From positions 1 through 64,000 of IMG/VR virus record IMGVR_UViG_3300027996_002186: 64,000 nt of DNA; one strand, written 5' to 3'. Made by a program: the position numbers and the translations under genes. Every line of letters begins with the position of its first letter. The first letter of the stretch is position 1. Under the pieces are notes generated by a model. That model searched no databases. It was not told the origin of the DNA and was given only the letters and a program-made list of their open reading frames with translations. Below are positions 1-15,465 of the stretch, one piece after another.

Positions 1-1
1 T

Positions 2-700
2 TATCCTGAATTTAGGTACACTGCAAAAGCTAACACAGTAGTATATAATTATGCTGACGGTGGAATGCCTGGCCCATTAGGTTGGAGAAATAACCTCAGA
101 CCTAATATGAGGCTTGGGTTTGGTGGCGGTGGTGGTTCACTACCAATTGAATTATTATCCTTTGGTGTTGAGTCTAACGATGCAAATGATGTGGTGGTTG
201 AATGGACTACAGCATCACAGAGCAACAATGACTACTTTACAGTTCAACGAAGTGTTGATGGATATGAGTGGGAGGAAGTAACTAAAATCACTGGTTGTGG
301 TAACTGTAATAGTCAGATAGATTACACATATTTAGACAGGAATCCATATACTGGCGTTTCATATTATAGATTGATGCAAACAGATTATGATGGAGTATTT
401 GAAATATTTGCACCACAGTCCGTTACTATCGCAAACAATCAAACAATAGGATTACATATTATACCTAATCCTGCAATAGATAACATCCAATTAGAGTTAG
501 TATATCCAGATCCATTACATCGAGACTATAATCATGATGTACGAATATACAATTCTGATGGAGTAGAAGTTTATAAGAAGTTTTATATGGGTGAGTTAGA
601 GGATTTTAACATTGATATTAAGAAACTTAAAACTGGATATTATATCATAAACACTAAAGGCGATCGAGTTAAAGGTACTGGAAAGTTTATAAAAGAATAG
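2..700 (+). CDS. T9SS (Por) type A sorting domain protein, 5'-truncated by window edge
   Basis: Frame open from nt 2. LPIELLSF...W.TASQ.NNDYF.VQRS.DG..W...YYRL.QTDYDG Ig-like module, then PNPA...IYN..G...L.TGYYII...KFIKE C-terminal domain typical of Bacteroidota T9SS cargo. Confidence 0.85.
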   Translation, partial: YPEFRYTAKANTVVYNYADGGMPGPLGWRNNLRPNMRLGFGGGGGSLPIELLSFGVESNDANDVVVEWTTASQSNNDYFTVQRSVDGYEWEEVTKITGCGNCNSQIDYTYLDRNPYTGVSYYRLMQTDYDGVFEIFAPQSVTIANNQTIGLHIIPNPAIDNIQLELVYPDPLHRDYNHDVRIYNSDGVEVYKKFYMGELEDFNIDIKKLKTGYYIINTKGDRVKGTGKFIKE

Positions 701-717
701 GACGGTATATAATAACT

Positions 718-948
718 TTATAAAGTTTTGATTATATTTGATTGTTTTAAAATTTCACTTATATCTTTTTGATTATACCAAATATATTCACTATTGGGAT
801 AACTAACACCGAAAAAGGGACCAGTACCTTCCTTATCCGTTCTTTTATATAATGGTAGGTTTTTCCCACTTTGTAATATCACTCCTTCTTTATCTTTGTG
901 AATAAATCTAATACCTATCCTCGGTCTCAATACTTCTATATTCATCAT
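718..948 (-). CDS. hypothetical protein
   Basis: ORF; start moved to MMNIEV to avoid overlap with upstream gene. Confidence 0.55.
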   Translation of the reverse strand: MMNIEVLRPRIGIRFIHKDKEGVILQSGKNLPLYKRTDKEGTGPFFGVSYPNSEYIWYNQKDISEILKQSNIIKTL

Positions 949-961
949 TATATTTCTTTTA

Positions 962-1156
962 CTATATGAAAAGCCAACCCACAATATCCAGATTAGTATC
1001 ATTATCAATTTTTTCTTCTTTAAACTTCAAGAAGCTTTCTTTGTTTGCAAATTGAGCAACTGATTGGTTACCATTAGTTTTATTTTTAAAGTGAATATAA
1101 CCCACCATGCTATTCTTTTTAAGTTCTTCTACGTTTGGTATTTTTACTATCATCAT
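962..1156 (-). CDS. hypothetical protein
   Basis: ORF; ATGA overlap with upstream small gene. Confidence 0.6.
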   Translation of the reverse strand: MMIVKIPNVEELKKNSMVGYIHFKNKTNGNQSVAQFANKESFLKFKEEKIDNDTNLDIVGWLFI

Positions 1157-1326
1157 ATATTATTTTTATTTCGGAGAATTAATAGATTTTCCATTCTCAT
1201 TCGAAGTTCTATAATCTTATACTCATCTGTCTCAGATTCTATCATTTCTTCTACTATATCGATAGAAGAATCTATCATCATTGATGATAATGCTTCATCT
1301 ACTTCTTCATCTGTTAGTTGTTTCAT
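1153..1326 (-). CDS. small acidic hypothetical protein (57 aa, not in ORF track)
   Basis: MKQLTDEEVDEALSSMM...RNKNNI*; TAATATATA motif just upstream; TGA overlaps next ATG. Confidence 0.65.
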   Translation of the reverse strand: MKQLTDEEVDEALSSMMIDSSIDIVEEMIESETDEYKIIELRMRMENLLILRNKNNI

Positions 1327-1362
1327 ATTATTATATATTACTTAGTTCTGAAAGATGTTAAA

Positions 1363-2607
1363 TTACATTTCTCCTTTAAGTGTTTCTAATTGGTTACTGA
1401 CCTCAGTAAGTCTTAGATTTGAATCTTCGAATATACCATCAAAGTGTTCTTCTGATACTAAGGTTTGGTTCTTATCAACTCCAGTAGTGATAGTTTCGAT
1501 GTTATATTCTATTTCAGATAAGTTAGTCCATATCTTGTTTAGTGACTCTCCTAAATTTTCACCAATACTCGATATTTTATTTTCAACATCACTGAGGTCT
1601 AATATAGATACTTCATTTGATTGTTTAAGTTTCGACATACTTATACCCGATGTTATCATATACCTACCAAGTGATTTAGCGCTCGTGTTAGGTAAACTAG
1701 AATTCAATACATAAATATAAACTTTATAAGCTTGTTTAAGAGCTATTATATAATAATCACATAATTGATCTTCTTCCAACGTTCTATGATCAATTCCATT
1801 TTGACTAACTAATTTAATATTTCCTTTATCAGCACCATAATCAACAAATTTGATTTGATATGTATCTAGTCCATTTTCACCAATGACATCAGCTTTCTTA
1901 TTATCATCAGGTACCGTACCATTAAGAAGACCTCCTATAAAAGACTCAAATAAGAACCCAGCACTTGTAGCATTAAAATGATCTTTCATCTCTTGTAAGT
2001 ATTTCAATAGCATGATAGCTGATATCTTTTGTTGTATTACTTGTGTAGCATTTGAATTATTATATCCGCGGATGCCTAATGGGTTATTTAGTTTATTTAA
2101 CTTTTCTCTTAACCCAGTCAGCCCTGTTCTATTACTAAGTGGTTTAGAGAACCTTTTAATCTTTTTGATAACCTCCATATCAATCTTAACATTGACCCAA
2201 CCACTCGCCTCAGTATCGATTATATTAGAATATTCTGGTATAGATGGTGTCGGATCAGTTTCATCCTCCCAGTCTTTGTTTCTTACCCATGGATTACCCA
2301 ATTCATCAGTAACCACTTCTCCATCAAAGTTTCTCAATTGGTGATTTCCATTAAAATCAAATCCAACTAAAAATCCATTCTTGTCGATACCACCAATATA
2401 TTCATGTTCTCTATTTCTTCTTAATTTATCAGTGTTATAATTCCAGTCCTTATCAATAATTATCTCAATTAAGTTACCACCTCTTCTGATATTTACTATA
2501 TGTCCTTTCTTCTTAACTAATCTACCATCATTACCAATTATCTTATCAAGAACTTTTATACTTGTTCCTAATTCCTTTTTTTCGTTAAATCTTTTTAGGT
2601 GTTTCAT
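1363..2607 (-). CDS. N-terminal-motif protein with putative PD-(D/E)XK nuclease-like domain
   Basis: Starts MKHLKRFNE; GFLFESF...KADV...TYQIK resembles the E...D...(E/Q)xK restriction-endonuclease motif order. Confidence 0.55.
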   Translation of the reverse strand: MKHLKRFNEKKELGTSIKVLDKIIGNDGRLVKKKGHIVNIRRGGNLIEIIIDKDWNYNTDKLRRNREHEYIGGIDKNGFLVGFDFNGNHQLRNFDGEVVTDELGNPWVRNKDWEDETDPTPSIPEYSNIIDTEASGWVNVKIDMEVIKKIKRFSKPLSNRTGLTGLREKLNKLNNPLGIRGYNNSNATQVIQQKISAIMLLKYLQEMKDHFNATSAGFLFESFIGGLLNGTVPDDNKKADVIGENGLDTYQIKFVDYGADKGNIKLVSQNGIDHRTLEEDQLCDYYIIALKQAYKVYIYVLNSSLPNTSAKSLGRYMITSGISMSKLKQSNEVSILDLSDVENKISSIGENLGESLNKIWTNLSEIEYNIETITTGVDKNQTLVSEEHFDGIFEDSNLRLTEVSNQLETLKGEM

Positions 2608-2612
2608 TGACA

Positions 2613-2622
2613 TATATATTAA
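2613..2622 (-). promoter_or_regulatory. TTAATATATA putative late promoter (example)
   Basis: 5 nt upstream of ATG at 2607; motif recurs dozens of times. Confidence 0.6.
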
Positions 2623-2674
2623 AAATAAATACTAGATTTGATATACACAATTTGGCGAAATCATCAGAAATACA

Positions 2675-2706
2675 AAAAGGCCCTGAGTAAAACTCAGAAC
2701 CTTTTT
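2675..2706 (-). terminator. intrinsic terminator after csp gene
   Basis: - strand aaaggttctgagt-ttt-actcagggcctttt hairpin (with G-U pairs) and U tail. Confidence 0.75.
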
Positions 2707-2732
2707 AATTGATTTTTCTAATTGATTTTTAA

Positions 2733-2930
2733 TTAATCAACTAACCCAACATCAACAGCAGTCTTGCCTTTACGACCCTCACCTTCTGTGTATGTTACCT
2801 TATCAGATTCTCTTATCTCCACACCTTCTAATAGTCCTGTTATGTGTACGAAGATATCTTCGCCTGTTTCATCATTATTAATGAATCCGAATCCTTTCGA
2901 ATCATTGAAAAATTTTACTGTTCCTTGCAT
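2733..2930 (-). CDS. cspA: cold-shock domain protein
   Basis: GTVKFFN..KGFGFI (RNP1) and DIFVHIT (RNP2) motifs, 65 aa. Confidence 0.95.
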   Translation of the reverse strand: MQGTVKFFNDSKGFGFINNDETGEDIFVHITGLLEGVEIRESDKVTYTEGEGRKGKTAVDVGLVD

Positions 2931-2979
2931 TATTTATTTATTTATTTTATTCTTTACTCAAAATGAGCTTGTTATTTAC

Positions 2980-3007
2980 ATTATACGTTGTTATTATAAT
3001 TAGTTTA
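2980..3007 (-). promoter_or_regulatory. TAAACT-N16-TATAAT promoter-like element (third class)
   Basis: Same spacing at 15434-15461(+), 42000-42027(-), 47496-47523(+). Confidence 0.5.
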
Positions 3008-3072
3008 ATAATTTATCATTTTTTTACGATACACAATTATAAAATTATAAATAAGTTTTTAATATATACTTT

Positions 3073-3483
3073 ATGAATCATATAAAATCATATAAAATAT
3101 TTGAATCCGAGTTGGGTTATGTTAGTAAACCAATCGATATAAAGTTCGATATAAAGACTGCTAAATTTGATTATAATAGAAATACAAAATATAGACATGG
3201 TATTGATAGGGTTATTAATGATGATGAAATAATTGAAATTGTCGAAAAGGGTATGGAAAAATTAACCATTGATTTGATGAATGATAATTTGGATATTGGT
3301 GATAGATTCGTGTTGAAAGGTGAGGGTTTTGATGGTGATATGTTAAATTTAGTTTGTCAGTTAAATCCTGGTGAGAATTTTTTCACATTGATGATCATAA
3401 CTGCTATGCGTAAAGAGGATTTCACAGGACATAGAAATCAATATATCTTGAATGTAGATACACAACAACATCATTACGAATAA
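3073..3483 (+). CDS. N-terminal-motif hypothetical protein
   Basis: MNHIKSYKIFES; TTAATATATA at 3059-3068. Confidence 0.8.
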   Translation: MNHIKSYKIFESELGYVSKPIDIKFDIKTAKFDYNRNTKYRHGIDRVINDDEIIEIVEKGMEKLTIDLMNDNLDIGDRFVLKGEGFDGDMLNLVCQLNPGENFFTLMIITAMRKEDFTGHRNQYILNVDTQQHHYE

Positions 3484-4313
3484 TGAGATATTTAAATAAA
3501 TATAATATCTATAAAGGTGATTTCTTGTTAGAAAGTTTGAATGAGTCTATTGATGTAGGTTCTTTTACATCTAAAATAAAAAATTATCTAAGTAATTTGA
3601 ATAAGAATCAAATAAAAGAATACTATAAAAAATTCATTGAAAAGGTATCAAAACTACCAAAAACAACAAAAAAGGCTATTTTAATAGGAGTTATACCAAT
3701 ATTTGCGTTAAATCTTAGTTCTGCTGACTTAGAACAATCAAGTGATCCAGTTGTTATAGAGGTTGTTAGTGAAGTAGAAACTTTAGAAGTGCAAGAACCA
3801 GTAGAAGAAATTGTAGAAGATAATTTCAAAAAAGGTTATGATTTTGTTTTAACACAAAACGGGTGGGATTCTATACGAGATGAAGAGAAATTAAGATTAT
3901 ATCCGTATGATATAGGTGATGGTAAAATAACAGTTGGATGGGGACATGCCGAAGATATCACTACATCTAAATATAAGATAGGTAATAAGATAAGTAAAGA
4001 GGAAGCTCAGAAATTATTAAAAGATGATTTGACATTAGCTGCTGATGCTGTTAGGCAAGTTTTCGTGGAGTGGAAAGAGAAGGATATAGATGTTGAAATA
4101 ACACAAGATATGTTTGATGCTTTAGTTTCAATAACATTTAACATTGGTGTTGGTGGTATGAGAAATTCGGACTTTATACAAGACTTAAAGAAAGGAGATT
4201 ATAAAGCTTGTGCTAATAGTATGAGAATACATAAGAGTAATCTATTTGAGAAGTTCCCTGGGTTAGAAACAAGACGAGGTAGAGAAGCTGATATTTACTT
4301 GAAAAATTATTAA
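3483..4313 (+). CDS. GH24 (phage lysozyme) with N-terminal motif extension
   Basis: EEKLRLYPYDIGDGKITVGWGH (E-x8-D-x5-T triad), FDALVSITFNIG, GLETRR..E; N-term MRYLNKY...LLESLNES. Confidence 0.9.
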   Translation: MRYLNKYNIYKGDFLLESLNESIDVGSFTSKIKNYLSNLNKNQIKEYYKKFIEKVSKLPKTTKKAILIGVIPIFALNLSSADLEQSSDPVVIEVVSEVETLEVQEPVEEIVEDNFKKGYDFVLTQNGWDSIRDEEKLRLYPYDIGDGKITVGWGHAEDITTSKYKIGNKISKEEAQKLLKDDLTLAADAVRQVFVEWKEKDIDVEITQDMFDALVSITFNIGVGGMRNSDFIQDLKKGDYKACANSMRIHKSNLFEKFPGLETRRGREADIYLKNY

Positions 4314-4333
4314 ATAAAAAAATAAATAATATC

Positions 4334-4615
4334 ATGAAGACGGAAGAAGAATTATCAAAAGAAAGTCAACCACAATATTTCACTTGGTTGTGGAGGAATA
4401 AAAAAACAGAGATATTACTTACCTTTGTTGGTATTGTATCATGTATTTTAACTACACCGATAATACTAGATCCTATGAACGAAAACCCAATTATTGTAAT
4501 GATTTTAGCTTTTATTGCAATATATGGATTTACTGTTGGTATGGCATTACAACCATACACAATATATAAAAAATTAGTTAAGATGAATTATTGGTCACGT
4601 AATTCTCCTTATTAG
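4334..4615 (+). CDS. two-TM membrane protein (holin candidate by position only)
   Basis: Two hydrophobic helices; directly follows lysozyme. Confidence 0.55.
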   Translation: MKTEEELSKESQPQYFTWLWRNKKTEILLTFVGIVSCILTTPIILDPMNENPIIVMILAFIAIYGFTVGMALQPYTIYKKLVKMNYWSRNSPY

Positions 4616-4633
4616 AAATAATATATAGAAAGT

Positions 4634-4930
4634 ATGAAATACTTAAAGACATTTGAAAATTATGGAATAGTAGAATCTGTTTCTTTCAATAGAAAGGATA
4701 AGGCTAGAATACTAACATTAAATGATAGAGCTACTGATGAGGATCACTTAATTAGACTAGCTGTTAATATGGCGAACGCTATTGGTAGAAATGTTGAAAA
4801 AGGAAGTGAGAACGAATATATCTCTGGTAAGAAAGCCTTTCAAAGAGGATTAGCAGCAGAAGATGAGAACTTCCACGAGGTAGCTCAGATATTTTTTGAT
4901 AGAGCAAAAGAATTGGGATTCGAAGAATAA
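4634..4930 (+). CDS. N-terminal-motif hypothetical protein
   Basis: MKYLKTFENYGIVES; TAATATATA at 4619-4627. Confidence 0.8.
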   Translation: MKYLKTFENYGIVESVSFNRKDKARILTLNDRATDEDHLIRLAVNMANAIGRNVEKGSENEYISGKKAFQRGLAAEDENFHEVAQIFFDRAKELGFEE

Positions 4931-6316
4931 TCATATAAATCTATACTTTTGAGAATTATAATTTTTCTCGAATTGTTCTTGTGATAATTCCACACCCCCA
5001 TGAATTGTCATTCCTAAAGTCTTTCCATTTAGAAAGTTTCCGACAGCAGACCTATCACACCCAATATTGAATCCATTTGTAACGCTACTAGTCAATGTAG
5101 TTATAGTTATAGTATCTTCTAATACACCATTAATGTATAATTTAGCGTTTCCATTTTCAACCGCTGAACATCCTATGTGATACCACGTATTTATTACAGG
5201 CGTAGTTGTAGCCGTCAAATTATCATTCACCGAAGCGTTTATTACAGTCGCTCTTAGTAAGTTTGGATTACCCGCATTAATCCTGATTAAAAAGTTTCTA
5301 TTGTTAGCATTATCATTATATTCAGACCGATACTCGCCTAAAAATGCGTTTATATAGATCCATTGCTCAAAACTAAAGGTAGATCCTATATCAGCAACAG
5401 GTAGAATCGGAAAACTTACATATTCGTCCGTGCCATCCATATCCAAAACCCCATCGGTTATGGTTAAACCATTTCGAAGCTCTCCTATCATTGTTGGATC
5501 TACTATATTCTTTATCAGATTACTTCCCCACTTATTAGTAAGTTGATTCGACTTCGTAATTATTTGACTTGACGTGTACACACCTTCTGCTACGAACATT
5601 TCCCCGTAAAATATATTGCCTGATCCCGTTAATGTCGATTGACCGTGACCTAAATAAGTAGCGCCTAAAGTCGCTAAAATAGCAGTTGCAGATGCGTTTA
5701 TTGGTTTAGTTCCATAAGACACACCATCAACAAATAATTCCATTAACTTATTTGATATTGATATTTTCAATGCGTAAATGTGTAAACTATCTATACTTTG
5801 GTCGGGTATTGTCCAAGTCGAAACTTCTTGCGTAGCCGTTCCTTGCCATTTATTAACACTCCTAAAAGTTGTTGATGTCGTGTGATTAATTGTTATTCCG
5901 TTAACTAATGGATTGATTGAAGTTGGCATTGAAAATATATTTCCATTGCTATAATCGAATGTGGAATACATTATAAGTAACTCCAAAATACCATCTGCAC
6001 TATATGAAGATGTTTGCACACCATTAGATGAGGTAACATCGTACCCGACACTTAAATTTCGATTGCTATAGTTCTCGTAAAATATAAACTCTTCGCCTAC
6101 TGCCGAGGTTCCCGTATAGCCATTTCCACTTTGGTCGGGAACTACCAATATATTATCGAGATTATTTAATCCCGTTATCTTAGAAAAATCCCAATGGAGT
6201 TTAATATTTGAATCAACTACATCTGGATAATTGGTTACCACAGATAGTTTATTACCCGTATCAGATTGAAACGTTCCTGAACTTGTTATTGCTGATTTAA
6301 ATCCTCCTGTGCTCAT
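4931..6316 (-). CDS. LamG/concanavalin-like virion fibre protein (two lectin-like domains)
   Basis: DGTDEYV, SFEQWIY, WYHI....KLYINGVL; C-term NYNSQKYRFI. Confidence 0.8.
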   Translation of the reverse strand: MSTGGFKSAITSSGTFQSDTGNKLSVVTNYPDVVDSNIKLHWDFSKITGLNNLDNILVVPDQSGNGYTGTSAVGEEFIFYENYSNRNLSVGYDVTSSNGVQTSSYSADGILELLIMYSTFDYSNGNIFSMPTSINPLVNGITINHTTSTTFRSVNKWQGTATQEVSTWTIPDQSIDSLHIYALKISISNKLMELFVDGVSYGTKPINASATAILATLGATYLGHGQSTLTGSGNIFYGEMFVAEGVYTSSQIITKSNQLTNKWGSNLIKNIVDPTMIGELRNGLTITDGVLDMDGTDEYVSFPILPVADIGSTFSFEQWIYINAFLGEYRSEYNDNANNRNFLIRINAGNPNLLRATVINASVNDNLTATTTPVINTWYHIGCSAVENGNAKLYINGVLEDTITITTLTSSVTNGFNIGCDRSAVGNFLNGKTLGMTIHGGVELSQEQFEKNYNSQKYRFI

Positions 6317-7044
6317 AAGTATCTATGTTTTTGTACTTCGTAATTATATAGTATCTGTTCGGGAGTTAATACTGCACTATGTATAGTTGTTAGACCGAGA
6401 GTTCCTTGAAGTGTATATTGATTAAAGGCATTTAGTTGCAACCTACCTAATACCCATATATTATTTACTAAATCCGTACCGTACTGCGTTATGGGATTAA
6501 TTGAATCGCTAACATCAGCAACCTTAACCCCATTAATAAACATTTCAGCATCCAATACATCTGAGGGTGCAGTATAAACTATGTTCATCCAATCTCCTTG
6601 ATTATAAGGAACTGTTGCGGGAATAGACCCATTACCCGAACCACCTTTTATTAACTGATTAAGGCAATTAACCGACACTTCATTTGATGCTGCTTGTCCA
6701 CTATTTCGACCCATACTTATTACCACAGCACCGCTTGAGCGACTTATGATATATGAACTAAAGATATTTCTTTCTTCTTGAACCCAAGTGGAAAGTGTAT
6801 AAGGTCTATCTGCTGCTCCTAAAGTTATTTGTGCTAATGGACTACTCGCTACATTCACTTGGTCATCGACACCATCAAAAACTATACCTTTGTCAGAGAA
6901 TGTTGTACCATTTTCTAAAAGGAGTTCTCTATGCTCAACAACATCTCTTATAGTAGTAGCGTCTTTACGCATAATTAAATTAGCACCATCAAAAGAGTAC
7001 CTTAGATTGTCCTTTACTATTGATTTACGTGCGAAGTGTCCCAT
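6313..7044 (-). CDS. LamG-like virion protein
   Basis: IVFDGVDDQV, TLSTWV, WMNIVYT, MFINGV; C-term NYEVQKHRYL. Confidence 0.8.
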   Translation of the reverse strand: MGHFARKSIVKDNLRYSFDGANLIMRKDATTIRDVVEHRELLLENGTTFSDKGIVFDGVDDQVNVASSPLAQITLGAADRPYTLSTWVQEERNIFSSYIISRSSGAVVISMGRNSGQAASNEVSVNCLNQLIKGGSGNGSIPATVPYNQGDWMNIVYTAPSDVLDAEMFINGVKVADVSDSINPITQYGTDLVNNIWVLGRLQLNAFNQYTLQGTLGLTTIHSAVLTPEQILYNYEVQKHRYL

Positions 7045-7045
7045 C

Positions 7046-7306
7046 TTATCCTTCTATAAGCCCTATTGGTAATGTCCATTCTACCGTTGCCATTACTGCT
7101 AATATCTCTTCGTGAGTGTATGTAGGTATGGTTGGTGTAATTACTGATACACTACTTGGTATATCTCCCTCCCATTTTAATACAAATTCTGTTTCATCAA
7201 TATTCTTACGAACTGTATCAGCAGATGTCTGTTGGACTTGTGAATAATCTACGTTATTTAATTCAGCTATCGGTGCTATTGCGTATGTCTTATTATTGTG
7301 TGCCAT
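7046..7306 (-). CDS. small conserved phage protein of LamG cassettes
   Basis: VDYSQV.QTS..TVRK..D.T.FVLKW.G; embedded between LamG genes. Confidence 0.7.
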   Translation of the reverse strand: MAHNNKTYAIAPIAELNNVDYSQVQQTSADTVRKNIDETEFVLKWEGDIPSSVSVITPTIPTYTHEEILAVMATVEWTLPIGLIEG

Positions 7307-7314
7307 AACTTTCT

Positions 7315-8034
7315 TTAATTTATATATCTTGATTTTTGTGCTTCGTAATTATCTAGTGCTTCTGCTTGGGTTAATTCTTTGTTGTAGATAACTAACTTTT
7401 TAAGACTTCCTTCTAAATAATTTGCAGACTCGTTAAATCTTCTACCGATTACAAATCTAGCATTTGCACCAATCGCTATTGGAGAAGCACTTAAAGTATC
7501 ATAGAATGTGACTAAAGTATCTTCAACGCCATCAGTATAAATGTGTATGCCCGAAACTAAACTACTACCATCATAAGTAACTACGTGGTGGTGTATTCCA
7601 TCGTTATACGTGTTTGTTGTTCTTACTGCAACCCCATTAGTAGTCGGTGTATTAACTAAACTGAAACCTAAAGCACCTAAAGGGGTATTTCGATATAACA
7701 CTCCCCAACCTCTGTATGAATTATCAGTTCCTTGTCTGCCACATACCCAATCAAATACCGAACCCGTAGATTTATCTATCCAAAATTCAATAGTAAATGA
7801 ATCAGTCCTCTCGAACTTGGCAAAGTCTTCATCAGCAAAATCAATCCATTGGTCAACACCATCAAGTTCCATTCCATCATCAACTACTGTAATTCCGTTT
7901 TGAAAAGTTCCATCATTACGAGCCACTAAGTCACGAATGGTACTGCCTGAATTCGGATAAGATACTTTATTGTCAGCATCTATAAGTAACCCAGAATTTG
8001 TTACTATTGGTATTTTATGATAGTGTACTCCCAT
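7315..8034 (-). CDS. LamG-like virion protein
   Basis: SYPNSGSTIRDL, DGVDQWI, FTIEFW, HHHVVTYDGS, IYNKELT; C-term NYEAQKSRYIN. Confidence 0.85.
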   Translation of the reverse strand: MGVHYHKIPIVTNSGLLIDADNKVSYPNSGSTIRDLVARNDGTFQNGITVVDDGMELDGVDQWIDFADEDFAKFERTDSFTIEFWIDKSTGSVFDWVCGRQGTDNSYRGWGVLYRNTPLGALGFSLVNTPTTNGVAVRTTNTYNDGIHHHVVTYDGSSLVSGIHIYTDGVEDTLVTFYDTLSASPIAIGANARFVIGRRFNESANYLEGSLKKLVIYNKELTQAEALDNYEAQKSRYIN

Positions 8035-8048
8035 AATTATGATATTTT

Positions 8049-8726
8049 TTATACTATTGTTGTGTTAAATACACTTGTTACTATCCACGCAGCTACTGTT
8101 GCCTCATATATTAGTTCTACTGAATCTCCTATATCGTTAAATGTTATAGTTGTATATCCTAAAAGGCTTGTGGGTGTTAGTGTTACTTTATCAGTAGGAT
8201 CACCTTCAGTAGTATATAATATTGTTATTCTCTGACCTTCAATACCATTTGGTAAGTCTAAAAAATCTGATGTGGTTGTGGTTGTTATTTTAGTAATACT
8301 TTTTGTAACATCTATACTTGCTGTAGTTCCTGTTGATGTTATGGTATAACTATTTAGATTTACGTCTATTGTGTTTGTGCTTAAAGTAGTATCTCCCGTC
8401 ACATCATTATAGTTTAACTCTAAAGGAACACCACTCGTTTGAAATGGATTTCCCATTTGAATTAACCAATCGGCATCCGCATACATAATATCATTACCAC
8501 TTACATCGGCTACTCCAAATAGTTGACCATCTTTATCGTCAGTGATTGTGAATAGACCTCCCGTAGTTCCATCAAAAGTAATGTTAGAAGCAGCAACTCC
8601 TGCTGTTGCTGATTGAACAATTTTAATAGCGTCAGATTCCAATGCCGCAGTTGATATAAACTTTAAATCACCATCTAGTTTTATATCACCATCTAGTATT
8701 TCCGCATTTCCGTATATTTTTGCCAT
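8049..8726 (-). CDS. putative virion structural/fibre protein
   Basis: Thr/Gly-rich beta-type composition; first gene of LamG operon, behind TTAATATATA at 8777-8786. Confidence 0.65.
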   Translation of the reverse strand: MAKIYGNAEILDGDIKLDGDLKFISTAALESDAIKIVQSATAGVAASNITFDGTTGGLFTITDDKDGQLFGVADVSGNDIMYADADWLIQMGNPFQTSGVPLELNYNDVTGDTTLSTNTIDVNLNSYTITSTGTTASIDVTKSITKITTTTTSDFLDLPNGIEGQRITILYTTEGDPTDKVTLTPTSLLGYTTITFNDIGDSVELIYEATVAAWIVTSVFNTTIV

Positions 8727-8839
8727 ATCCCGTTATTTATTTTACAATCGACTTAAAATATATAATTGTAATATAGTATATATTAATTTTTTAATAAAAA
8801 ATAGTTTGTGTTTCTAAATAATACGAAAAATAAATAAAA

Positions 8840-9535
8840 TTACTTACAGTGATAACAATTCTTACCAAAATTTTCACACCATTGGTCTATTGTGCAGAAA
8901 GCTTCCATATATTTAATATATCCCCTTAACCCTTGGCATATAAATTTATCCCAGTAATTATACTTTATTGTATAATTCCATAAATCAATTTCACTCCAAT
9001 TATACTTATCTTTTATATACTTAGCCACTTGATATCCAGTTCTATCAGCACCGGCTGTGCAGTGTATAAGAACTTTACCCCTTCTTAAATATGGTTGTAT
9101 AATATCTAAGGATTCAACATAACCACTATCTTTCTTATAACCCAAATGTGCATTAACCCATACAAACTTTTTACCTAAACTTTCAACCAATTTTCTCTCA
9201 GAGTTAATACCAACACCAGTACCTTCTAACGCATTCATTCTAACTACAACATCTATATCATAATTAGTTATTATTGACTTTAATTGAGATAGTGATGGTT
9301 GGTTTGTTCTAAAAACATTGTTACCACCAGGAACAGTATCAAATTTAGATGGTAGGTTATTTATCCTAATAAATGTGTCCTTTACAACCTCACCCACCTC
9401 ATTGTTATTTTCAACATTTTCAGTTAATTTATAATTACTAATAGAAACACCTTGATTATTTGAATAAATTGATAAAATTATAAAACTTGATATAAGTAAT
9501 AAAGATGATATTAATATAATATTTATTCTTGACAT
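8840..9535 (-). CDS. protein tyrosine/dual-specificity phosphatase with N-terminal signal anchor
   Basis: VLIHCTAGADRTG (HCxxGxxR) motif. ATG is cat at 9533-9535 and stop is tta at 8840, so the gene is on - (ORF track says +). Confidence 0.85.
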   Translation of the reverse strand: MSRINIILISSLLLISSFIILSIYSNNQGVSISNYKLTENVENNNEVGEVVKDTFIRINNLPSKFDTVPGGNNVFRTNQPSLSQLKSIITNYDIDVVVRMNALEGTGVGINSERKLVESLGKKFVWVNAHLGYKKDSGYVESLDIIQPYLRRGKVLIHCTAGADRTGYQVAKYIKDKYNWSEIDLWNYTIKYNYWDKFICQGLRGYIKYMEAFCTIDQWCENFGKNCYHCK

Positions 9536-9623
9536 ATGATATATATCACACTAAAAATATGTATATTGTATTTATAGTTGAAACTATTTAAAATTAGTTA
9601 CATATACAATAAAAATAAAAATT

Positions 9624-9842
9624 ATGAAAGATTACAAAAAATGGACAGAAGACGAAGTAGCTTTAGTTAGAGCTGCAATTAAAAACAATGCAGAGGATAT
9701 GAACTATCTAACCAAAGCACTTAACAGAACAGAGGGTAGTGTATCTTGTAGATTGGGAAGGGAAAGAATGTCAATGGGTTTAGAATCAAACTATACTGGT
9801 GAAACTATTGGTCATGTTAAGACAGAACCTATTTTAATATAA
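9624..9842 (+). CDS. small Myb/SANT-like HTH DNA-binding protein
   Basis: KKWTEDE...L.......LNRTEGSV..R pattern. Confidence 0.55.
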   Translation: MKDYKKWTEDEVALVRAAIKNNAEDMNYLTKALNRTEGSVSCRLGRERMSMGLESNYTGETIGHVKTEPILI

Positions 9843-9871
9843 ACAAATTAAAAAATTATACTATAATTTTA

Positions 9872-9959
9872 GTCGATGAGGTGGTGTGGGTTACGCGATC
9901 CTTAGACGTAAGGATTGGTCTTAAATGGCTAATTAGGGTTCGATTCCCTGACATCGACC
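9872..9959 (+). tRNA. non-canonical tRNA-like element (anticodon not assignable)
   Basis: Acceptor GTCGATG/CATCGAC, T arm TAGGG-TTCGATT-CCCTG, long variable arm; anticodon-position hairpin has a 4- or 8-nt loop; no encoded CCA. Confidence 0.55.
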
Positions 9960-9984
9960 TCCGGTTTTAATAAAGTTAGACAAG

Positions 9985-10821
9985 TTATGATAGTTGGTAT
10001 TCGGAAAACTTCAATATCTTACTTTCATTGAAGTAATTATCCACTGGGTTTATTTCTTTGCTATATGATACCTCAGTTTCGATTTCTTCATCAGGAAATA
10101 GTTTAGGAAACTTTATATTCTTTATCTTATCTATAACTCTCTTAACCGCTAATATACCAATATCATTAAATGATTTCAACCCTTTGATTATATCAACCAT
10201 GAAATGTTTTATAGCAAAAACACCAACACCAATACCAGTTACTATTAATTTACCGACACCATCAGTAGATATCGCAGTTAAAATTGATGATATTGAAGTA
10301 TCACTTTGTTGACCAATATCATTAAATATCAACGCAAATGGTACAAATAAGGCTGTATAAGCAAACATTTCACCAAAAGATGTTACTATTTTACCCAATT
10401 TAGATGATATAAAGTTAAAAACGTTCTTAATACCTTTCATTGATGTTATAAGTGGTTTTATTAAATGAAATATATTTTCATTCTTTAATTTGGTAATTAA
10501 GTCTTTATATTTCTCTTTAGGTTCACTTAATAAAATACCCATTAAACAAACAGTTAAATAAACAATACTTGATTTGGAAATCTCTTGTGGTAATTCCATT
10601 TCTGTTACAAGCTTCTCTATTATAGGATATAATCCCTTAACAGCTGGAGCGAAAACAAACACAAATGAATATTCATAACCTAATTGATTCATAAGTTTTT
10701 TAACACTACCATCCGGTTCTTCCTTATTATGATGATGAACAGCTGCTTGTCCCGGTGTCTTATTTTCCAATAAAAAATTACATTCTCTTTCTGTGATATA
10801 ATCACTATACTTATTAATCAT
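9985..10821 (-). CDS. N-terminal-motif membrane protein
   Basis: MINKYSDYITE...LLEN; several hydrophobic helices; on - strand (ORF track says +). Confidence 0.75.
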   Translation of the reverse strand: MINKYSDYITERECNFLLENKTPGQAAVHHHNKEEPDGSVKKLMNQLGYEYSFVFVFAPAVKGLYPIIEKLVTEMELPQEISKSSIVYLTVCLMGILLSEPKEKYKDLITKLKNENIFHLIKPLITSMKGIKNVFNFISSKLGKIVTSFGEMFAYTALFVPFALIFNDIGQQSDTSISSILTAISTDGVGKLIVTGIGVGVFAIKHFMVDIIKGLKSFNDIGILAVKRVIDKIKNIKFPKLFPDEEIETEVSYSKEINPVDNYFNESKILKFSEYQLS

Positions 10822-10840
10822 ACACTATATATAAATATAT

Positions 10841-10930
10841 CTAGATACTTTTCGAAATGTTAGCGAATAGATATTTTATATCAAGTGTATTGATAGATTC
10901 GAATAATTTATATCAACTTATATACTTCAT
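10841..10930 (-). pseudogene. relic of an N-terminal-motif gene
   Basis: TTAATATATA-gagca-ATG then MKYIS*YKLFESINTLDIKYLFANISKSI*. Confidence 0.7.
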
Positions 10931-10956
10931 TGCTCTATATATTAATAACGAATTAG

Positions 10957-10964
10957 TATATTTG
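10957..10964 (+). promoter_or_regulatory. Bacteroidota-type -7 box TATATTTG
   Basis: TAnnTTTG consensus ahead of a structured leader and ORF 11100. Confidence 0.6.
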
Positions 10965-10968
10965 TTAT

Positions 10969-11094
10969 ATGAATTGGTACGACTAATTCACCCTATGTGA
11001 AGGTAGGTAAATTTCAAACATGACTTCTCCTCTCTGTTTGTTTCGCCTAGCTGAGCGAGCTCCACTTTTTTGTAGGAAGCGAATCAGTTTTTTT
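10969..11094 (+). ncRNA. candidate structured leader/ncRNA
   Basis: Serial hairpins (TGAATTGG/CTAATTCA; CAAACA/TGTTTG; TTCGC/GCGAA), locally GC-richer, ends in T-run. Confidence 0.35.
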
Positions 11095-11099
11095 ATTAT

Positions 11100-11366
11100 A
11101 TGATAATATTTAATACCATAAAGAAAGCAGAACATTATGTCTCCTACTGTAACAAGAAGGTTGATCGGGAAGAGGGTGGATATGATTGGTCCTCTGTAAG
11201 AACTTTTATAGAGGGTGAATATATTATATGCAATAGCTCCGGTGATGGTTGTGGTTGTGGGTGTGATGATTATATGTATGATTATAATGAAGTAATTGGT
11301 CGTATAAAATCGTATGATAAAAAAAGTATTCGTGGTAATAAACTAAAACAGATCATCGGTTTTTGA
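11100..11366 (+). CDS. hypothetical protein with C-terminal RxxK(L/I)xxI tag
   Basis: GCGCGC cluster; ends IRGNKLKQIIGF. Confidence 0.7.
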   Translation: MIIFNTIKKAEHYVSYCNKKVDREEGGYDWSSVRTFIEGEYIICNSSGDGCGCGCDDYMYDYNEVIGRIKSYDKKSIRGNKLKQIIGF

Positions 11367-11434
11367 ACAGATTTGAACAGAAAAAAATCTACAATATCTC
11401 AATAAATAAATAATTTATATTAATATATATAAAT

Positions 11435-11944
11435 ATGTTATTAAAGTATAAACTTTTTTTAGAAAAAAAATTCGATTCTAGAAAAGATATTGAGGGTTAT
11501 GTAGATGCCAATGAATTGGTTGGACAAAGACTTTGGTTTCATACCAATAGGACTAATCGTAATAACGGTAATAATGGGATGATTGGTGTTTATAGTACAT
11601 CACCTTCTGGTAGAAAAAAGGGTTTAGCTGGTAGGTATACGAATGAAGTTAGACTAACAGATCCTATTTTCTTTCAGACCTCAATAGCAGGATCTGATAC
11701 TATAAAGGCTACAAAAAAGAGAGGTTTAATAGCAGGAGTTTCGGGTGTAGTTGTTGAAACAAATAATGATATAAATAATATGATTCCGATAACTTACAAC
11801 CCCAACGAAAATGGGTATTTTCATGAGGTGGGAGATGTGGATGCAAAAGAAATAATATCGGGTAGTGAGGTATATTTCAACTCAACAGAAGATGGACAAT
11901 GGTTTATCTATGTGAAAAATCCCGTGTATCAATTACTCAAATAG
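11435..11944 (+). CDS. N-terminal-motif phage protein
   Basis: MLLKYKLFLE; TTAATATATA upstream. Confidence 0.8.
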   Translation: MLLKYKLFLEKKFDSRKDIEGYVDANELVGQRLWFHTNRTNRNNGNNGMIGVYSTSPSGRKKGLAGRYTNEVRLTDPIFFQTSIAGSDTIKATKKRGLIAGVSGVVVETNNDINNMIPITYNPNENGYFHEVGDVDAKEIISGSEVYFNSTEDGQWFIYVKNPVYQLLK

Positions 11945-12149
11945 AAAATAAACCGAGTTCCGATTCAAATATTACTCCAAAAATATATAAGCCAAAAAAT
12001 TGGTCGTTGAGTAGCACTGGATTTATAACAATACCAAATTATTGGATTGAAGGAAGACAACCAGATTTACGTTTAGATATCTACGACATATACTTTCTTA
12101 AAGTGGTAATATTAATTTATGATATGTTTATTTTTAATATATAACTATA

Positions 12150-12704
12150 ATGAAACACCTTATAAGATATAATGAGTCTGATGAGTCTGATGATAATAAA
12201 TTAGATATTAAGTATATAGAATCTTGCTTTGCTGAATTAATAGATAATTATATTGATTATAATAATGGTTATTTAGGAAGAAATAGTTGGACGAAAAATC
12301 CTATTACTAGTAGTTTAGAATATGGTGCTGAGGATTATTACAGTAATGAAAGTTGGTCTATTAGGTTATTACTTGAAGGAACACCAACAAATATGTCTGA
12401 TGATCTATCCGATGGTAGTATAAAAACATCAGGGGTTCATAGATCATCATATAGAATTGGATATAAGTTAGGTAAGTTAGTCAAGGACGCAAATGAAAAA
12501 CTTGAGATATTAAAGGAAATTGAAGTGGGTGTTAAACGAATTAAGGAAAAATACCCATCATATAATATAGATTTCAATAAACAATTTACACATAGTAAGG
12601 ATACACAAACCACGATACAAGAATTTATAGTTGTTGGTATTAGTCAACCACATTCAGATCGTTTACGACAGGTTAAATATAACTGGAAAGACGCGAATAT
12701 TTAA
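12150..12704 (+). CDS. N-terminal-motif protein, paralog family
   Basis: MKHLIRYNES; YIESCFAELIDN. Confidence 0.8.
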   Translation: MKHLIRYNESDESDDNKLDIKYIESCFAELIDNYIDYNNGYLGRNSWTKNPITSSLEYGAEDYYSNESWSIRLLLEGTPTNMSDDLSDGSIKTSGVHRSSYRIGYKLGKLVKDANEKLEILKEIEVGVKRIKEKYPSYNIDFNKQFTHSKDTQTTIQEFIVVGISQPHSDRLRQVKYNWKDANI

Positions 12705-13054
12705 AAGATAATTGTATTAATTTTATATCCTCTTTCAAACATTTTATAAGCTCTCAGAAAATCTTCTTGTTTCGTAAATAAGCTTATTAAATAGTTTTCA
12801 AATTCTACACCAGTGTAACCATCCATGAGCGAGTTTCTAATTCCTCCTACCTTTATAACAATACCTTCATAATCAAAGACAGAATGATCAGTGTCTATAT
12901 CAATACTAAAATTACTCAAAAGGAATCCTATGTGTTTCGCTTTTTCTAAGTATTCTAATCCGATTTTATCATCATAATCACCACACATTATATCATTGAG
13001 GTTTTCACTTAAACCTCCAAAAGTTTTAAATGGTGTTTTATCCAAATGTTTCAT
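12701..13054 (-). CDS. hypothetical protein with C-terminal tag
   Basis: Ends ERGYKINTIIF; TATATTTG box at 13147-13154(-). Confidence 0.7.
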   Translation of the reverse strand: MKHLDKTPFKTFGGLSENLNDIMCGDYDDKIGLEYLEKAKHIGFLLSNFSIDIDTDHSVFDYEGIVIKVGGIRNSLMDGYTGVEFENYLISLFTKQEDFLRAYKMFERGYKINTIIF

Positions 13055-13178
13055 TTAATAAATTTACTGTGTATAATATAATCGACATACACATCAACCA
13101 TATTAAAAACTTGTTAATATTTTCTTTATACTTTTTATACATATCACAAATATAAGGATTATTATTAATATATAACAT

Positions 13179-13610
13179 ATGAAACATCTCAAAAGAATAA
13201 ATGAGTTATATCTAACATCAGATGTGTCTAGTGTTATAGATGATATATTATTGGAGATTAATGATATACCTAAGTTTGTTGGTCTTAATTGGAATCATAC
13301 GGATCGTTTGGGTCGGGCATCTGAACATAGTTTTTTGGTTATTATTAAGTTGAGTGAGGGTATAGAAGATGGTATGGATTATGGTGTTGGTTTAGATGAG
13401 GAAATAACAGAAACTATTAAAAGGTTATTAGAATTTATGACAAGCAATCGATATGAATACTTGATGGAATTTGGAACAGATAACATACCACCTGGTACTT
13501 CAAAAAAAGAATTAAGTGATTATATTAGGAAGTTTGAATATAGTGAATTATCTGATAATGATTTAACTATGTGGGTGGATGAATTTATAAGAATAACTTT
13601 TACAAAATGA
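13179..13610 (+). CDS. N-terminal-motif protein, paralog family
   Basis: MKHLKRINE; VIDDILLEIND...TIKRLLEFM. Confidence 0.8.
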   Translation: MKHLKRINELYLTSDVSSVIDDILLEINDIPKFVGLNWNHTDRLGRASEHSFLVIIKLSEGIEDGMDYGVGLDEEITETIKRLLEFMTSNRYEYLMEFGTDNIPPGTSKKELSDYIRKFEYSELSDNDLTMWVDEFIRITFTK

Positions 13611-14026: not shown

Positions 14027-14207
14027 TTAATTACTTTATAAACAATACAACATTTAATTTTTAGTTCCATTTTTCTAATTCATATTCCTTTAAGGTTATC
14101 CAAATACCAAGTATTCTATGTTGTAAAGCTCTAGTAGTAACTAAACAAGTTGCCTTGCGGTTTCGGATAGTAAAAATATTTTTAGTTTTTATTCTATACA
14201 TAGTTAA

Positions 14208-14567: not shown

Positions 14568-14624
14568 TAAACCAAATCTTTTATATCTTTGAATAAAAAT
14601 AATAATCACCCCTCGATAATATCA

Positions 14625-14828: not shown

Positions 14829-14909
14829 AGTTTATATTTTTTAATTATTACTTTATTTATATACAAATGTAAGGATATTATCATACTAATACAAATTAAT
14901 ATATACTTT

Positions 14910-15436: not shown

Positions 15437-15465
15437 ACCTTATTGATATTGCTTATATAATGTTT

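What the first reader, a model, noticed from the sequence alone, without database searches (positions are those of the whole stretch)
2..700. Phage-encoded T9SS cargo protein
Seen: a typical LPIELLSF Ig-like module plus type A C-terminal sorting domain. Known: such CTDs route proteins through the Bacteroidota type IX secretion system to the cell surface. Inference: the phage exports its own protein through the host T9SS, e.g. for receptor masking, superinfection exclusion or substrate access.
Basis: partly seen in the sequence, partly recalled or inferred. Interest (0 to 1): 0.6.

Follow-up and report, generated by a model that had tools for sequence, protein, structure and literature searches.

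The report
Megaphage-encoded type IX secretion cargo protein
The start of this window is the tail end of a gene, carried by a giant marine phage, for a sticky-looking protein that has every sequence mark of export through the type IX secretion system of its Bacteroidota host; such phage genes have been noted once before, and here they prove to be a conserved, multi-gene trait of a whole megaphage clade.

Summary
Observation confirmed. Window 2-700 (+) encodes the last 232 residues of a protein. It ends in a type A T9SS sorting domain (PF18962 32.7 bits, cut-off 27; TIGR04183 27.5, cut-off 23). An Fn3-like 'LPIELLSF' beta-sandwich precedes that domain.

The ORF is cut only because the 483-kb viral contig starts inside the gene. 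A second assembly of the same phage, 100% identical, holds the whole 523-aa gene. Its parts are a signal peptide with +1 Gln, a CUB domain, a discoidin-like jelly roll, a Gly linker, the LPIELLSF module and the CTD.

Host chimera is rejected:
- The locus recurs in 19 seawater DNA runs from 15 studies, with equal depth on both flanks.
- Orthologs (65-82% identity, dN/dS about 0.12) lie in phage contexts.
- The best bacterial matches are only 31-54% identical, and all are Bacteroidota.

The phage is a Mahaphage-clade megaphage: its terminase is 83% identical to that of LR745206. It carries several further signal-peptide proteins with T9SS-type C-termini, one of them type B. LR745206 and LR756502 carry type A cargo too.

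Secretion itself and the biological role are inferred. Surface adhesion or remodelling is my preferred role. Phage-encoded T9SS cargo was proposed earlier (Cryophage, 2020), so this is a new member of a known kind.

The parts
2..118 (+). Last 39 residues of the middle passenger domain. This is a discoidin-like jelly roll, aa 155-330 of the full 523-aa protein. The rest of the gene lies beyond the contig start.
   Evidence: An HMM of the middle domain built from alignment A1 matches aa 1-39. The full gene is L009:7128-8696 in the second assembly. The fold resembles the neuropilin b1 domain in two-domain alignments.
119..139 (+). Glycine-rich linker (F-G-G-G-G-G-S).
   Evidence: Read directly from the sequence. 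pLDDT is below 50 here. Alignment A2 varies in length at this point.
140..445 (+). 'LPIELLSF' module, an Fn3-like beta-sandwich.
   Evidence: The family HMM scores 168 bits at aa 45-148. The AF2 model has pLDDT 75-89 and matches Fn3 domains at Z about 10. Invariant residues are L47 P48 I49 L51 F54 W68 and Y121 Y122 R123 L124 Q126 D128.
458..697 (+). T9SS type A C-terminal sorting domain (CTD), running to the last residue.
   Evidence: PF18962 32.7 bits (cut-off 27) and TIGR04183 27.5 bits (cut-off 23). Structural matches to solved T9SS CTDs 8qb1, 8glk and 8gl6. Invariant P155 N156 P157, G212, Y214 and near-invariant K228.
698..700 (+). Stop codon TAG.

Best explanation
Window 2-700 is the 3' part of a 523-codon gene of a marine megaphage. 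The phage belongs to the Mahaphage clade, its true genome is well over 545 kb, and its host is most likely a marine member of Bacteroidota.

The product has these parts in order:
- a Sec signal peptide, with predicted cleavage ...VYA|Q (Gln at +1, the Bacteroidota 'Q-rule');
- a CUB domain;
- a discoidin-like jelly roll;
- a Gly linker;
- an Fn3-like LPIELLSF module;
- a type A T9SS C-terminal sorting domain.

Proposed mechanism (inferred, not shown): during infection the protein crosses the inner membrane by Sec. The host's SprA/PorV translocon recognises its CTD. The protein is moved across the outer membrane, the CTD is removed by the PorU-type sortase, and the protein is released or fixed on the cell surface.

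All passenger domains are binding modules and none is an enzyme. The most likely role is therefore a lectin or adhesin that changes what the infected cell surface binds. That could mean attachment to particles or polysaccharide, or masking of phage receptors. I put this functional step at about 0.35; the confidence given here is for the architecture-level claim (phage-encoded T9SS type A cargo).

The gene is one of a phage repertoire. The same LPIELLSF+CTD cassette is fused to other passenger domains (G8, MAM, Cys-rich jelly rolls) in paralogs and in related phages.
For: Shown:
- CTD HMM hits lie above the cut-offs and at the extreme C-terminus.
- The CTD fold matches solved, translocon-bound T9SS CTDs.
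- The full gene with signal peptide and CUB (54.6 bits; Z 16.8 to TSG-6 CUB) sits in a 100%-identical second assembly.
- The contig is phage: Terminase_6N 74 bits, TerL 83% identical to LR745206 and 72% to LR756502. It also has a phage lysozyme and a tail lysozyme.
- Relatives LR745206 and LR756502 encode signal peptide + CTD proteins at 48.7 and 53.7 bits.
- Four further ORFs of the same contig have a signal peptide plus an LPIELLSF module and/or a type A CTD-like end, and another has a type B CTD (CHU_C 52.5 bits).
- Orthologs at 65-82% identity lie in phage-like contexts.
- dN/dS is about 0.12. In the CTD alone pN is 0.12 against pS 0.77.
- IMG/VR holds 189 relatives of the cassette.

Host phylum:
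- All 80 best bacterial matches are Bacteroidota, at only 31-54% identity.
- Shine-Dalgarno-like motifs precede 3.9% of 507 crude genes against a 6.9% background, and leaders are A-rich.
- About 12 signal peptides are followed by Gln.
- Al-Shayeb et al. predicted Bacteroidetes hosts for the megaphages over 634 kb of this clade (PMC7162821).

Continuity: 19 DNA runs from 15 studies hold the locus. Flank depths are equal (20.2 vs 20.3; 12.8 vs 12.7) and the flanking contigs show no differences.
Against: - No experiment shows secretion, CTD cleavage or surface attachment.
- The host is not identified. No CRISPR or Hi-C link was sought.
- The signal peptide was judged by eye and by a crude script, not by a trained predictor.
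- The CTD scores are only 4-6 bits above the cut-offs.
- Transcription is not shown. The single RNA run held only a relative's CTD fragment with 12 differences.
- The function of the passenger rests on fold class alone. The middle domain matches no family.
- Downstream neighbours include ConA-like lectin proteins that could be tail fibres, so a virion role is not excluded.
Confidence: 0.8

Rival explanations
1. Assembly chimera or contamination: the first 700 bases are host (Bacteroidota) DNA wrongly joined to a phage contig.
For: The gene lies at the very end of the contig and is truncated. CTD proteins are typical bacterial genes. Contigs of other runs also break inside this gene.
Against: - A second assembly is 100% identical across the junction and carries 62 kb more upstream.
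- Flank depths are equal in independent runs, and an exact contig bridges the G000 start.
- Paralogs lie deep inside the same contig at 300, 376, 401 and 460 kb.
- The best bacterial identity is 31-54%, against 60-86% among phage-context homologs.
- The breaks are explained by a 10-20-fold higher word depth over L009:7337-8171, which comes from more abundant related phages sharing that stretch.
Confidence: 0.02
2. Virion protein: the Fn3-like module and the CTD-like sandwich are structural Ig-like domains of a fibre or decoration protein. The CTD resemblance does not mean secretion.
For: Ig/Fn3-like domains are common on phage virions (established knowledge). ConA-like (Laminin_G_3) paralogs and a lysozyme lie a few kb downstream. 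Foldseek also lists phage tail-tip proteins among weak matches.
Against: - The full gene starts with a typical Sec signal peptide followed by Gln, as do its paralogs. Virion proteins assemble in the cytoplasm.
- The CTD matches the HMMs end to end at the extreme C-terminus and keeps the PNP, GxY and K-x-x-K motifs.
- The same genome also has a type B CTD protein, a TonB-dependent receptor and an outer-membrane barrel, which points to an envelope-directed gene set.
Confidence: 0.08
3. Passenger gene without a role for the phage: a host gene captured by chance and drifting.
For: Huge phages carry many host-like genes. The nearest cellular relatives of the cassette are Bacteroidota.
Against: - dN/dS is about 0.12 between orthologs whose synonymous sites are near saturation, and the CTD is included.
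- Orthologs occur in many related phage contigs from Tara, JGI and ENA.
- No close bacterial donor exists; the best identity is 54% over 90 residues.
- The cassette has been re-used with several passenger domains within the phage lineage.
Confidence: 0.04
4. True T9SS cargo, but released as a soluble factor that binds free polysaccharide, competing phages or neighbouring cells, rather than staying on the infected cell.
For: In Flavobacteriia many type A CTD proteins are released after CTD removal, whereas surface adhesins such as SprB use type B CTDs (established knowledge). The phage has a separate type B protein.
Against: Nothing here separates released from attached. This is a variant of the main explanation, not a contradiction.
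Confidence: 0.3

Closest known systems
Bacterial T9SS type A cargo proteins (TIGR04183 / PF18962), e.g. F. johnsoniae NucA and RemA, T. forsythia mirolase, P. gingivalis RgpB
   Same: N-terminal Sec signal peptide and passenger domains. An Ig/Fn3-like domain stands directly before a roughly 80-aa beta-sandwich CTD at the extreme C-terminus. The HMM hits are above the cut-offs, and the CTD fold superposes on solved CTDs.
   Different: It is encoded by a phage and is only 31-54% identical to any bacterial cassette. The passenger is CUB + discoidin-like with no enzyme. In most relatives it is paired with a SiaC/DUF1987 gene, which is absent from all 80 bacterial loci.
'Cryophage' T9SS-CTD genes (Bellas et al. 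2020, Nat Commun, PMC7468147)
   Same: A phage genome predicted to infect Bacteroidota carries several genes with type A sorting domains. They are read as cargo that hijacks the host T9SS, and they vary between phage variants.
   Different: The Cryophage cargo are an endoglucanase, a GH39 and a PA14 protein, from glacier cryoconite. Here the passengers are binding modules (CUB, G8, MAM-like), the phage is a marine megaphage, the trait is shared by the Mahaphage-clade genomes LR745206 and LR756502, and a type B CTD protein is present too.
Mahaphage-clade megaphages LR745206, LR756502 and Mar_Mega_1 (Al-Shayeb 2020, PMC7162821; Michniewski 2021, PMC9723777)
   Same: TerL is 83% and 72% identical. 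They share very large genomes, predicted Bacteroidetes hosts, a SusC/TonB-dependent receptor gene, LPIELLSF modules and signal peptide + CTD proteins.
   Different: Neither paper's main text mentions T9SS; Al-Shayeb was searched for the terms, and about the first 10,000 of the 17,718 characters of Michniewski were read. Their CTD proteins are short (186-199 aa) with other passengers. No CUB-type ortholog was found in deposited phage records.
Metazoan CUB-discoidin receptors (neuropilin a2-b1)
   Same: The predicted CUB domain followed by a jelly roll superposes on neuropilin a2b1 (Z 16.0 over 219 residues). The CUB alone matches TSG-6 at Z 16.8 and 30% identity.
   Different: The resemblance is in fold and domain order only. 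Nothing shows shared ligands or common descent of the whole architecture.

Membership tests
T9SS type A cargo (TIGR04183 / PF18962) | The C-terminal domain matches the family HMM above the curated cut-off. | tested here: met
   PF18962 32.7 bits against 27; TIGR04183 27.5 against 23. Genome-frame search gives 34.8 and 29.4 bits.
T9SS type A cargo (TIGR04183 / PF18962) | The domain lies at the extreme C-terminus of the protein. | tested here: met
   The TIGR04183 model, positions 1-72 of 72, ends at residue 232 of 232, directly before the stop at 698-700.
T9SS type A cargo (TIGR04183 / PF18962) | N-terminal Sec signal peptide. | tested here: met
   It is absent from the window because the ORF is truncated. 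In the 100%-identical assembly, L009:7128-8696 starts with a K/R-rich n-region, a hydrophobic helix (AF2 helix 9-21) and ...VYA|Q. This was judged by inspection and a crude script; no trained predictor was available.
T9SS type A cargo (TIGR04183 / PF18962) | Beta-sandwich CTD fold like solved CTDs. | tested here: met
   8qb1_A: Z 10.3, rmsd 2.5, 80 aa. 8glk_D: Z 9.7, 74 of 75 aa. 8gl6_D: Z 9.1. These Z values are tied with generic Fn3/Ig matches, so the fold alone is not specific. The sequence profile hit to 8glk_D (E 7e-4) adds specificity.
T9SS type A cargo (TIGR04183 / PF18962) | Conserved CTD motifs: PxP near the start, GxY, and a basic C-terminal strand. | tested here: met
   P155 N156 P157, G212 and Y214 are invariant and K228 is at least 90% conserved in 26 sequences. 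Assigning them to the published motifs B, D and E is from my own knowledge.
T9SS type A cargo (TIGR04183 / PF18962) | The producing cell has a T9SS. | tested here: inconclusive
   The host is not identified. Indirect evidence: all 80 best cellular matches are Bacteroidota, Shine-Dalgarno motifs are not used, Gln follows signal peptides, and relatives were predicted to infect Bacteroidetes.
T9SS type A cargo (TIGR04183 / PF18962) | T9SS-dependent export and CTD removal. | not testable with these tools
   This needs expression in wild-type and T9SS-mutant Bacteroidota.
Phage-encoded gene (not host DNA) | Contiguous with phage hallmark genes in independent assemblies. | tested here: met
   TerL, lysozymes and a sheath-like ORF are on the same contig. 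A second assembly and 19 DNA runs hold the locus, with equal flank depth.
CUB domain (PF00431), in the full-length gene and outside the window | HMM hit above the cut-off and a CUB fold. | tested here: met
   54.6 bits against 21.4. Z 16.8, rmsd 1.8 and 30% identity to TSG-6 CUB 2wno. The profile hit has E 7.6e-7.
T9SS type B cargo (CHU_C / TIGR04131) | CHU_C HMM hit above the cut-off. | tested here: not met
   The window protein scores 15.2-15.6 bits against a cut-off of 27. A different protein of the same phage, G000:474094-474684, scores 52.5 bits.

The most novel reading that the evidence does not exclude
Mahaphage-clade megaphages carry a conserved, recombining secretome aimed at the host's type IX secretion system. 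It has type A and type B cargo, and a portable Fn3-like+CTD cassette that is shuffled onto different binding domains. It also includes a second, uniform class in which the LPIELLSF module is followed by a tail of about 36 residues, which may be an undescribed short sorting signal. It is often coupled to a phage-specific SiaC/DUF1987 gene. With these genes the phage would re-dress the surface of the infected cell during its long replication cycle.
Probability: 0.3. Interest if true: 0.7.

Novelty: new member of a known kind. Interest (0 to 1): 0.5.

Why it matters
T9SS is the route by which Bacteroidota place adhesins, gliding-motility proteins and polymer-degrading enzymes on their surface. 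If giant phages load their own binding proteins onto this route, infected cells ('virocells') in the ocean would differ from uninfected ones in what they stick to and in which phages can adsorb to them. That bears on particle colonisation and carbon flow.

Practical uses follow:
- A CTD together with the Gln rule is a phylum-level host marker for uncultured megaphages.
- The compact phage cassette (Fn3-like module + CTD, about 190 aa) could be tested as a secretion tag.
- The locus warns that CheckV's '98% complete' is wrong for this contig.

Tried and rejected
- Circular join. There is no terminal repeat, and no + strand ORF runs off the 3' end of the 483-kb contig. Its last 20 kb does not match the second assembly. 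The N-terminus therefore could not be recovered from the contig itself.
- PHROGs on the ten largest window ORFs gave no hit at 1e-5. Phage identity was instead shown by TerL, lysozymes and close megaphage relatives.
- PorP/SprF (PF11751), a possible phage-encoded partner for the type B cargo, gave no hit. The control genomes were silent too, so this result is uninformative.
- The LPIELLSF module was scanned in Pfam and NCBIfam. Only a weak F5_F8_type_C_2 hit appeared (E 0.09). A literature search for the motif strings found nothing.
- Transcription. The only RNA run held a fragment of a relative's CTD (12 differences in 199 nt) and exact pieces of a neighbouring gene. The tool states this does not show transcription.
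- tblastn of the full protein against deposited phages found only the LPIELLSF module in four huge-phage records. CTDs there had to be found by HMM.
- A by-eye look for a Bacteroidota -7 promoter motif upstream of the gene found none. It was not pursued, because megaphages may use their own promoters.
- The large representative protein search and the complex prediction were not used. The word search and family scans left nothing open, and I make no binding claim.

Full report
WHAT IS IN THE WINDOW

The window is the first 64 kb of a 483,262-bp IMG/VR virus record. The record is linear, 29.6% G+C, and CheckV rates it 98% complete. An ORF on the + strand runs from base 2 to the stop at 698-700 and has no stop upstream, so it is cut by the contig start.

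Its last 80 residues match the type A T9SS sorting domain above both curated cut-offs:
- PF18962 scores 32.7 bits against 27.
- TIGR04183 scores 27.5 bits against 23, covering the full model and ending on the last residue.

Residues 47-148 begin with L-P-I-E-L-L-S-F. They match no Pfam or NCBIfam model.

An AlphaFold2 model was built on 26 homologous C-termini and has pLDDT above 80 for residues 48-232. It shows two beta-sandwiches:
- The first superposes on Fn3 domains at Z about 10.
- The second superposes on solved T9SS CTDs: mirolase 8qb1_A (Z 10.3, rmsd 2.5, 80 residues, 25% identity), the NucA CTD bound in the F. johnsoniae translocon 8glk_D (Z 9.7), and the RemA CTD 8gl6_D (Z 9.1).

A sequence profile also finds 8glk_D at E 7e-4.

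THE WHOLE GENE

A scan of IMG/VR found the contig IMGVR_UViG_3300025770_000870 (241,918 bp). It is 100% identical to the window over every stretch tested: 1-8697, 8001-28000 and 44001-64000. It continues 62 kb upstream of window base 1.

In that contig the gene is internal and complete, at L009:7128-8696 (523 aa). Its parts are:
- A signal peptide with a K/R-rich start, a hydrophobic helix and ...VYA followed by Gln.
- A CUB domain: PF00431 54.6 bits; Z 16.8 and 30% identity to TSG-6 CUB.
- A middle beta domain of about 180 residues with no family hit. In two-domain alignments it lies on neuropilin b1, and its nearest ESM-Atlas clusters are mostly viral.
- A Gly-rich linker.
- The LPIELLSF module.
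- The CTD.

No catalytic domain is present.

WHY THE CONTIG ENDS INSIDE THE GENE, AND WHY THIS IS NOT A CHIMERA

The 5-kb stretch around the gene is held by 19 DNA runs of sea water from 15 studies. I laid two runs that are not marked as possible sources:
- Long contigs cover both flanks without a single difference.
- The flanks have equal depth: 20.2 and 20.3 in one run, 12.8 and 12.7 in the other.
- The gene interior (L009:7337-8171) has 10-20 times that word depth and carries variants. More abundant related phages in the same water share this stretch, and short-read assemblers break there.

In a third run, a small exact contig bridges the position where the 483-kb contig starts.

Further points against host contamination:
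- Paralogs lie deep inside the same contig (see below).
- Orthologs of 65-82% identity sit in phage-like neighbourhoods with DUF3310, DUF932, ribosomal protein S21, ferritin and many small ORFs without families.
- dN/dS against one such ortholog is about 0.12. In the CTD alone pN is 0.12 against pS 0.77.
- Among one genome for each of 185,579 prokaryote species, the cassette finds 591 relatives. The best 80 are all Bacteroidota, mainly Crocinitomicaceae, Cryomorphaceae, Vicingaceae, Parvicellaceae, Cyclobacteriaceae and Saprospiraceae. Their identity is only 31-54%, against 60-86% among the phage-context homologs.

IS IT A PHAGE, AND WHICH ONE?

The ten largest window ORFs have no PHROGs hit. 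The contig does encode:
- a large terminase (Terminase_6N, 74 bits);
- a sheath-like 1330-aa ORF (27.6 bits, below the cut-off);
- a phage lysozyme, a tail lysozyme and several ConA-like lectin proteins.

The terminase is 83% identical to that of LR745206 (634,780 bp) and 72% to that of LR756502 (642,428 bp). The nearest cultured phages infect Tenacibaculum and Flavobacterium.

These two records are huge phages of the Mahaphage clade. Al-Shayeb et al. predicted that its members over 634 kb replicate in Bacteroidetes (PMC7162821). Mar_Mega_1 is the marine sister of these two records (PMC9723777).

The 483-kb contig is therefore a fragment:
- The second assembly adds at least 62 kb that matches nothing in it.
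- A 312,709-bp contig from the same sample carries one of its genes at 100% identity.

A REPERTOIRE, NOT A SINGLE GENE

HMMs built from the family, together with Pfam, find further secreted proteins in the same contig:

| G000 position | Features |
|---|---|
| 401265-402245 | Signal peptide, G8 domain (36.9 bits), LPIELVEF module, type A CTD (TIGR04183 24.9-27.1 bits) |
| 376177-377211 (-) | Signal peptide, Cys-rich beta passenger, LPIELLSF module, short C-terminal tail of about 40 residues |
| 460604-462067 (-) | Signal peptide, Cys-rich beta passenger, LPIDLVFF module, short C-terminal tail of about 40 residues |
| 300294-300695 | Signal peptide, weak CTD (20-23 bits, below the cut-off) |
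| 474094-474684 | Signal peptide, PKD-like domain, type B CTD (CHU_C 52.5 bits) |
| 473537-474091 | PKD-like protein |
| 472188-473510 | SprB-repeat protein (27.6 bits, cut-off 28) |

The contig also encodes a TonB-dependent receptor, and the window holds a DUF2490 outer-membrane barrel and a secreted EEP-family nuclease/phosphatase.

About a dozen of the signal peptides are followed by Gln. This is the pattern known for Bacteroidota signal-peptidase I substrates (my own knowledge of the 'Q-rule').

Shine-Dalgarno-like motifs precede only 3.9% of 507 crude genes, against a 6.9% background, and leaders are A-rich. This too is typical of Bacteroidota.

LR745206 and LR756502 each encode short proteins with a signal peptide and a strong type A CTD (48.7 and 53.7 bits). 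The trait is therefore shared across marine, lake and subsurface members of the clade.

In IMG/VR the cassette has 189 relatives. Of the best 80 loci:
- 25 have the module plus a full CTD.
- 55 have the module plus a strikingly uniform tail of 34-43 residues.

HOW IT MOST LIKELY WORKS

Shown: the domain architecture, the phage origin, purifying selection, and the Bacteroidota signature.

Inferred: Sec export, recognition of the CTD by the host translocon, removal of the CTD, and release or surface attachment.

The passenger consists only of binding-type folds (CUB, jelly roll, Fn3). Paralogs swap in other binding modules (G8, MAM-like). I therefore favour a lectin or adhesin that alters what the infected cell surface binds. 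Whether this serves attachment to particles or polymers, receptor masking or exclusion of other phages cannot be decided here. I put the architecture-level claim (phage-encoded T9SS type A cargo) at about 0.8 and any one functional reading at no more than 0.35.

COMPARISON WITH WHAT IS KNOWN

T9SS type A cargo is a well-defined class, and every sequence-level criterion is met. The host's T9SS and the secretion step are untested.

Phage-encoded T9SS cargo has been proposed once in the literature I could search. Bellas et al. 2020 described three variable genes with type A sorting domains in 'Cryophage' and called this a unique occurrence (PMC7468147). A search of the Al-Shayeb main text for T9SS terms found none, and the part of the Michniewski text I read (about 10,000 of 17,718 characters) does not mention T9SS.

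The finding is therefore a new member of a known kind, with added value in five respects:
- It is clade-wide in megaphages.
- Both CTD types are present.
- The cassette is portable.
- A short-tail class exists.
- It is paired with a SiaC/DUF1987 gene.

The SiaC gene directly follows the cargo gene in all six phage-context loci of relatives examined (L010, L017-L021) and in nine of 80 IMG/VR loci. It is absent from all 80 bacterial loci. In this phage the SiaC gene follows the G8 paralog, not the window gene.

LIMITS

- No trained signal-peptide predictor, host link or expression data were available.
- The AF2 models are of moderate confidence (mean pLDDT 73-74).
- The fold of the middle domain was not tested on its own.

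Noticed in passing
G000 whole contig; G001 = IMGVR_UViG_3300025770_000870; L183: The 483-kb record is rated 98% complete by CheckV, but it is a fragment. A 100%-identical second assembly adds at least 62 kb upstream that matches nothing in it. A 312,709-bp contig from that sample carries one of its genes at 100% identity. Its terminase is 83% identical to that of the 634,780-bp phage LR745206. The true genome is probably around 600 kb or more.
   Followed up: partly
G000:402230-402625; L017:11566-11946; L020:11536-11919; L010:757-1134: A SiaC/DUF1987 gene (PF09345, 100 bits) directly follows the CTD-protein gene, mostly overlapping its stop. This holds in all six phage-context loci of relatives examined and in nine of 80 IMG/VR loci. 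It is absent from all 80 bacterial loci carrying the same cassette. In this phage it follows the G8 paralog, not the window gene. Its role is unknown.
   Followed up: partly
G000:472188-474684: A cluster of three signal-peptide proteins: a SprB-repeat protein (27.6 bits, cut-off 28), a PKD-like protein, and a PKD-like protein ending in a type B T9SS sorting domain (CHU_C 52.5 bits). In the related contig L010 this cluster lies next to the ortholog of the window gene.
   Followed up: partly
G000:376177-377211 (-), G000:460604-462067 (-); 55 of 80 IMG/VR loci (L115-L194): A second C-terminal class: the LPIELLSF module is followed by a uniform 34-43-residue tail instead of a full CTD. The tail has a conserved G-Q-x-V ... 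Y-x-G ... D-G pattern. It might be a shortened sorting signal. I know of no description of it.
   Followed up: partly
window 27158-27886 (-), window 37887-38501 (+), G000:81187-83166 (-): Further envelope-directed phage genes: a secreted endonuclease/exonuclease/phosphatase-family protein, a DUF2490/KdgM-like outer-membrane barrel, and a TonB-dependent receptor with Plug domain. All have signal peptides followed by Gln.
   Followed up: partly
G000, 507 crude genes: Shine-Dalgarno-like motifs are rarer upstream of starts (3.9%) than in background sequence (6.9%). Leaders are 50-60% A. This is the Bacteroidota style of translation initiation.
   Followed up: yes
window 4931-8034 (-): A run of minus-strand genes that includes two ConA-like lectin (Laminin_G_3) proteins (window 4931-6316 and 7315-8034). 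The three larger ORFs of the run have similar C-terminal ends; the one between the two lectin proteins (6313-7044) has no family hit. They may be fibre or receptor-binding proteins. A phage lysozyme (3483-4313) and a cold-shock protein (2733-2930) lie nearby.
   Followed up: partly
L009:5725-6933 (directly upstream of the gene, outside the window): A class I/II aminotransferase gene (PF00155, 250 bits) sits in the phage genome directly upstream of the cargo gene. It is a likely auxiliary metabolic gene.
   Followed up: no
L009:7337-8171 (window about 1-172 and upstream): In independent seawater runs this part of the gene has 10-20 times the depth of its flanks and carries variants. One abundant contig diverges exactly at the start of the LPIELLSF module. 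This suggests recombination or mosaicism between co-occurring related phages at the passenger/cassette boundary.
   Followed up: partly
window 55566-57683 (+), 61780-63960 (-): A 705-aa protein with a Peptidase_C39-like domain and a 726-aa protein with a phage tail lysozyme domain. Neither they nor the other eight large window ORFs tested match any PHROGs family.
   Followed up: no
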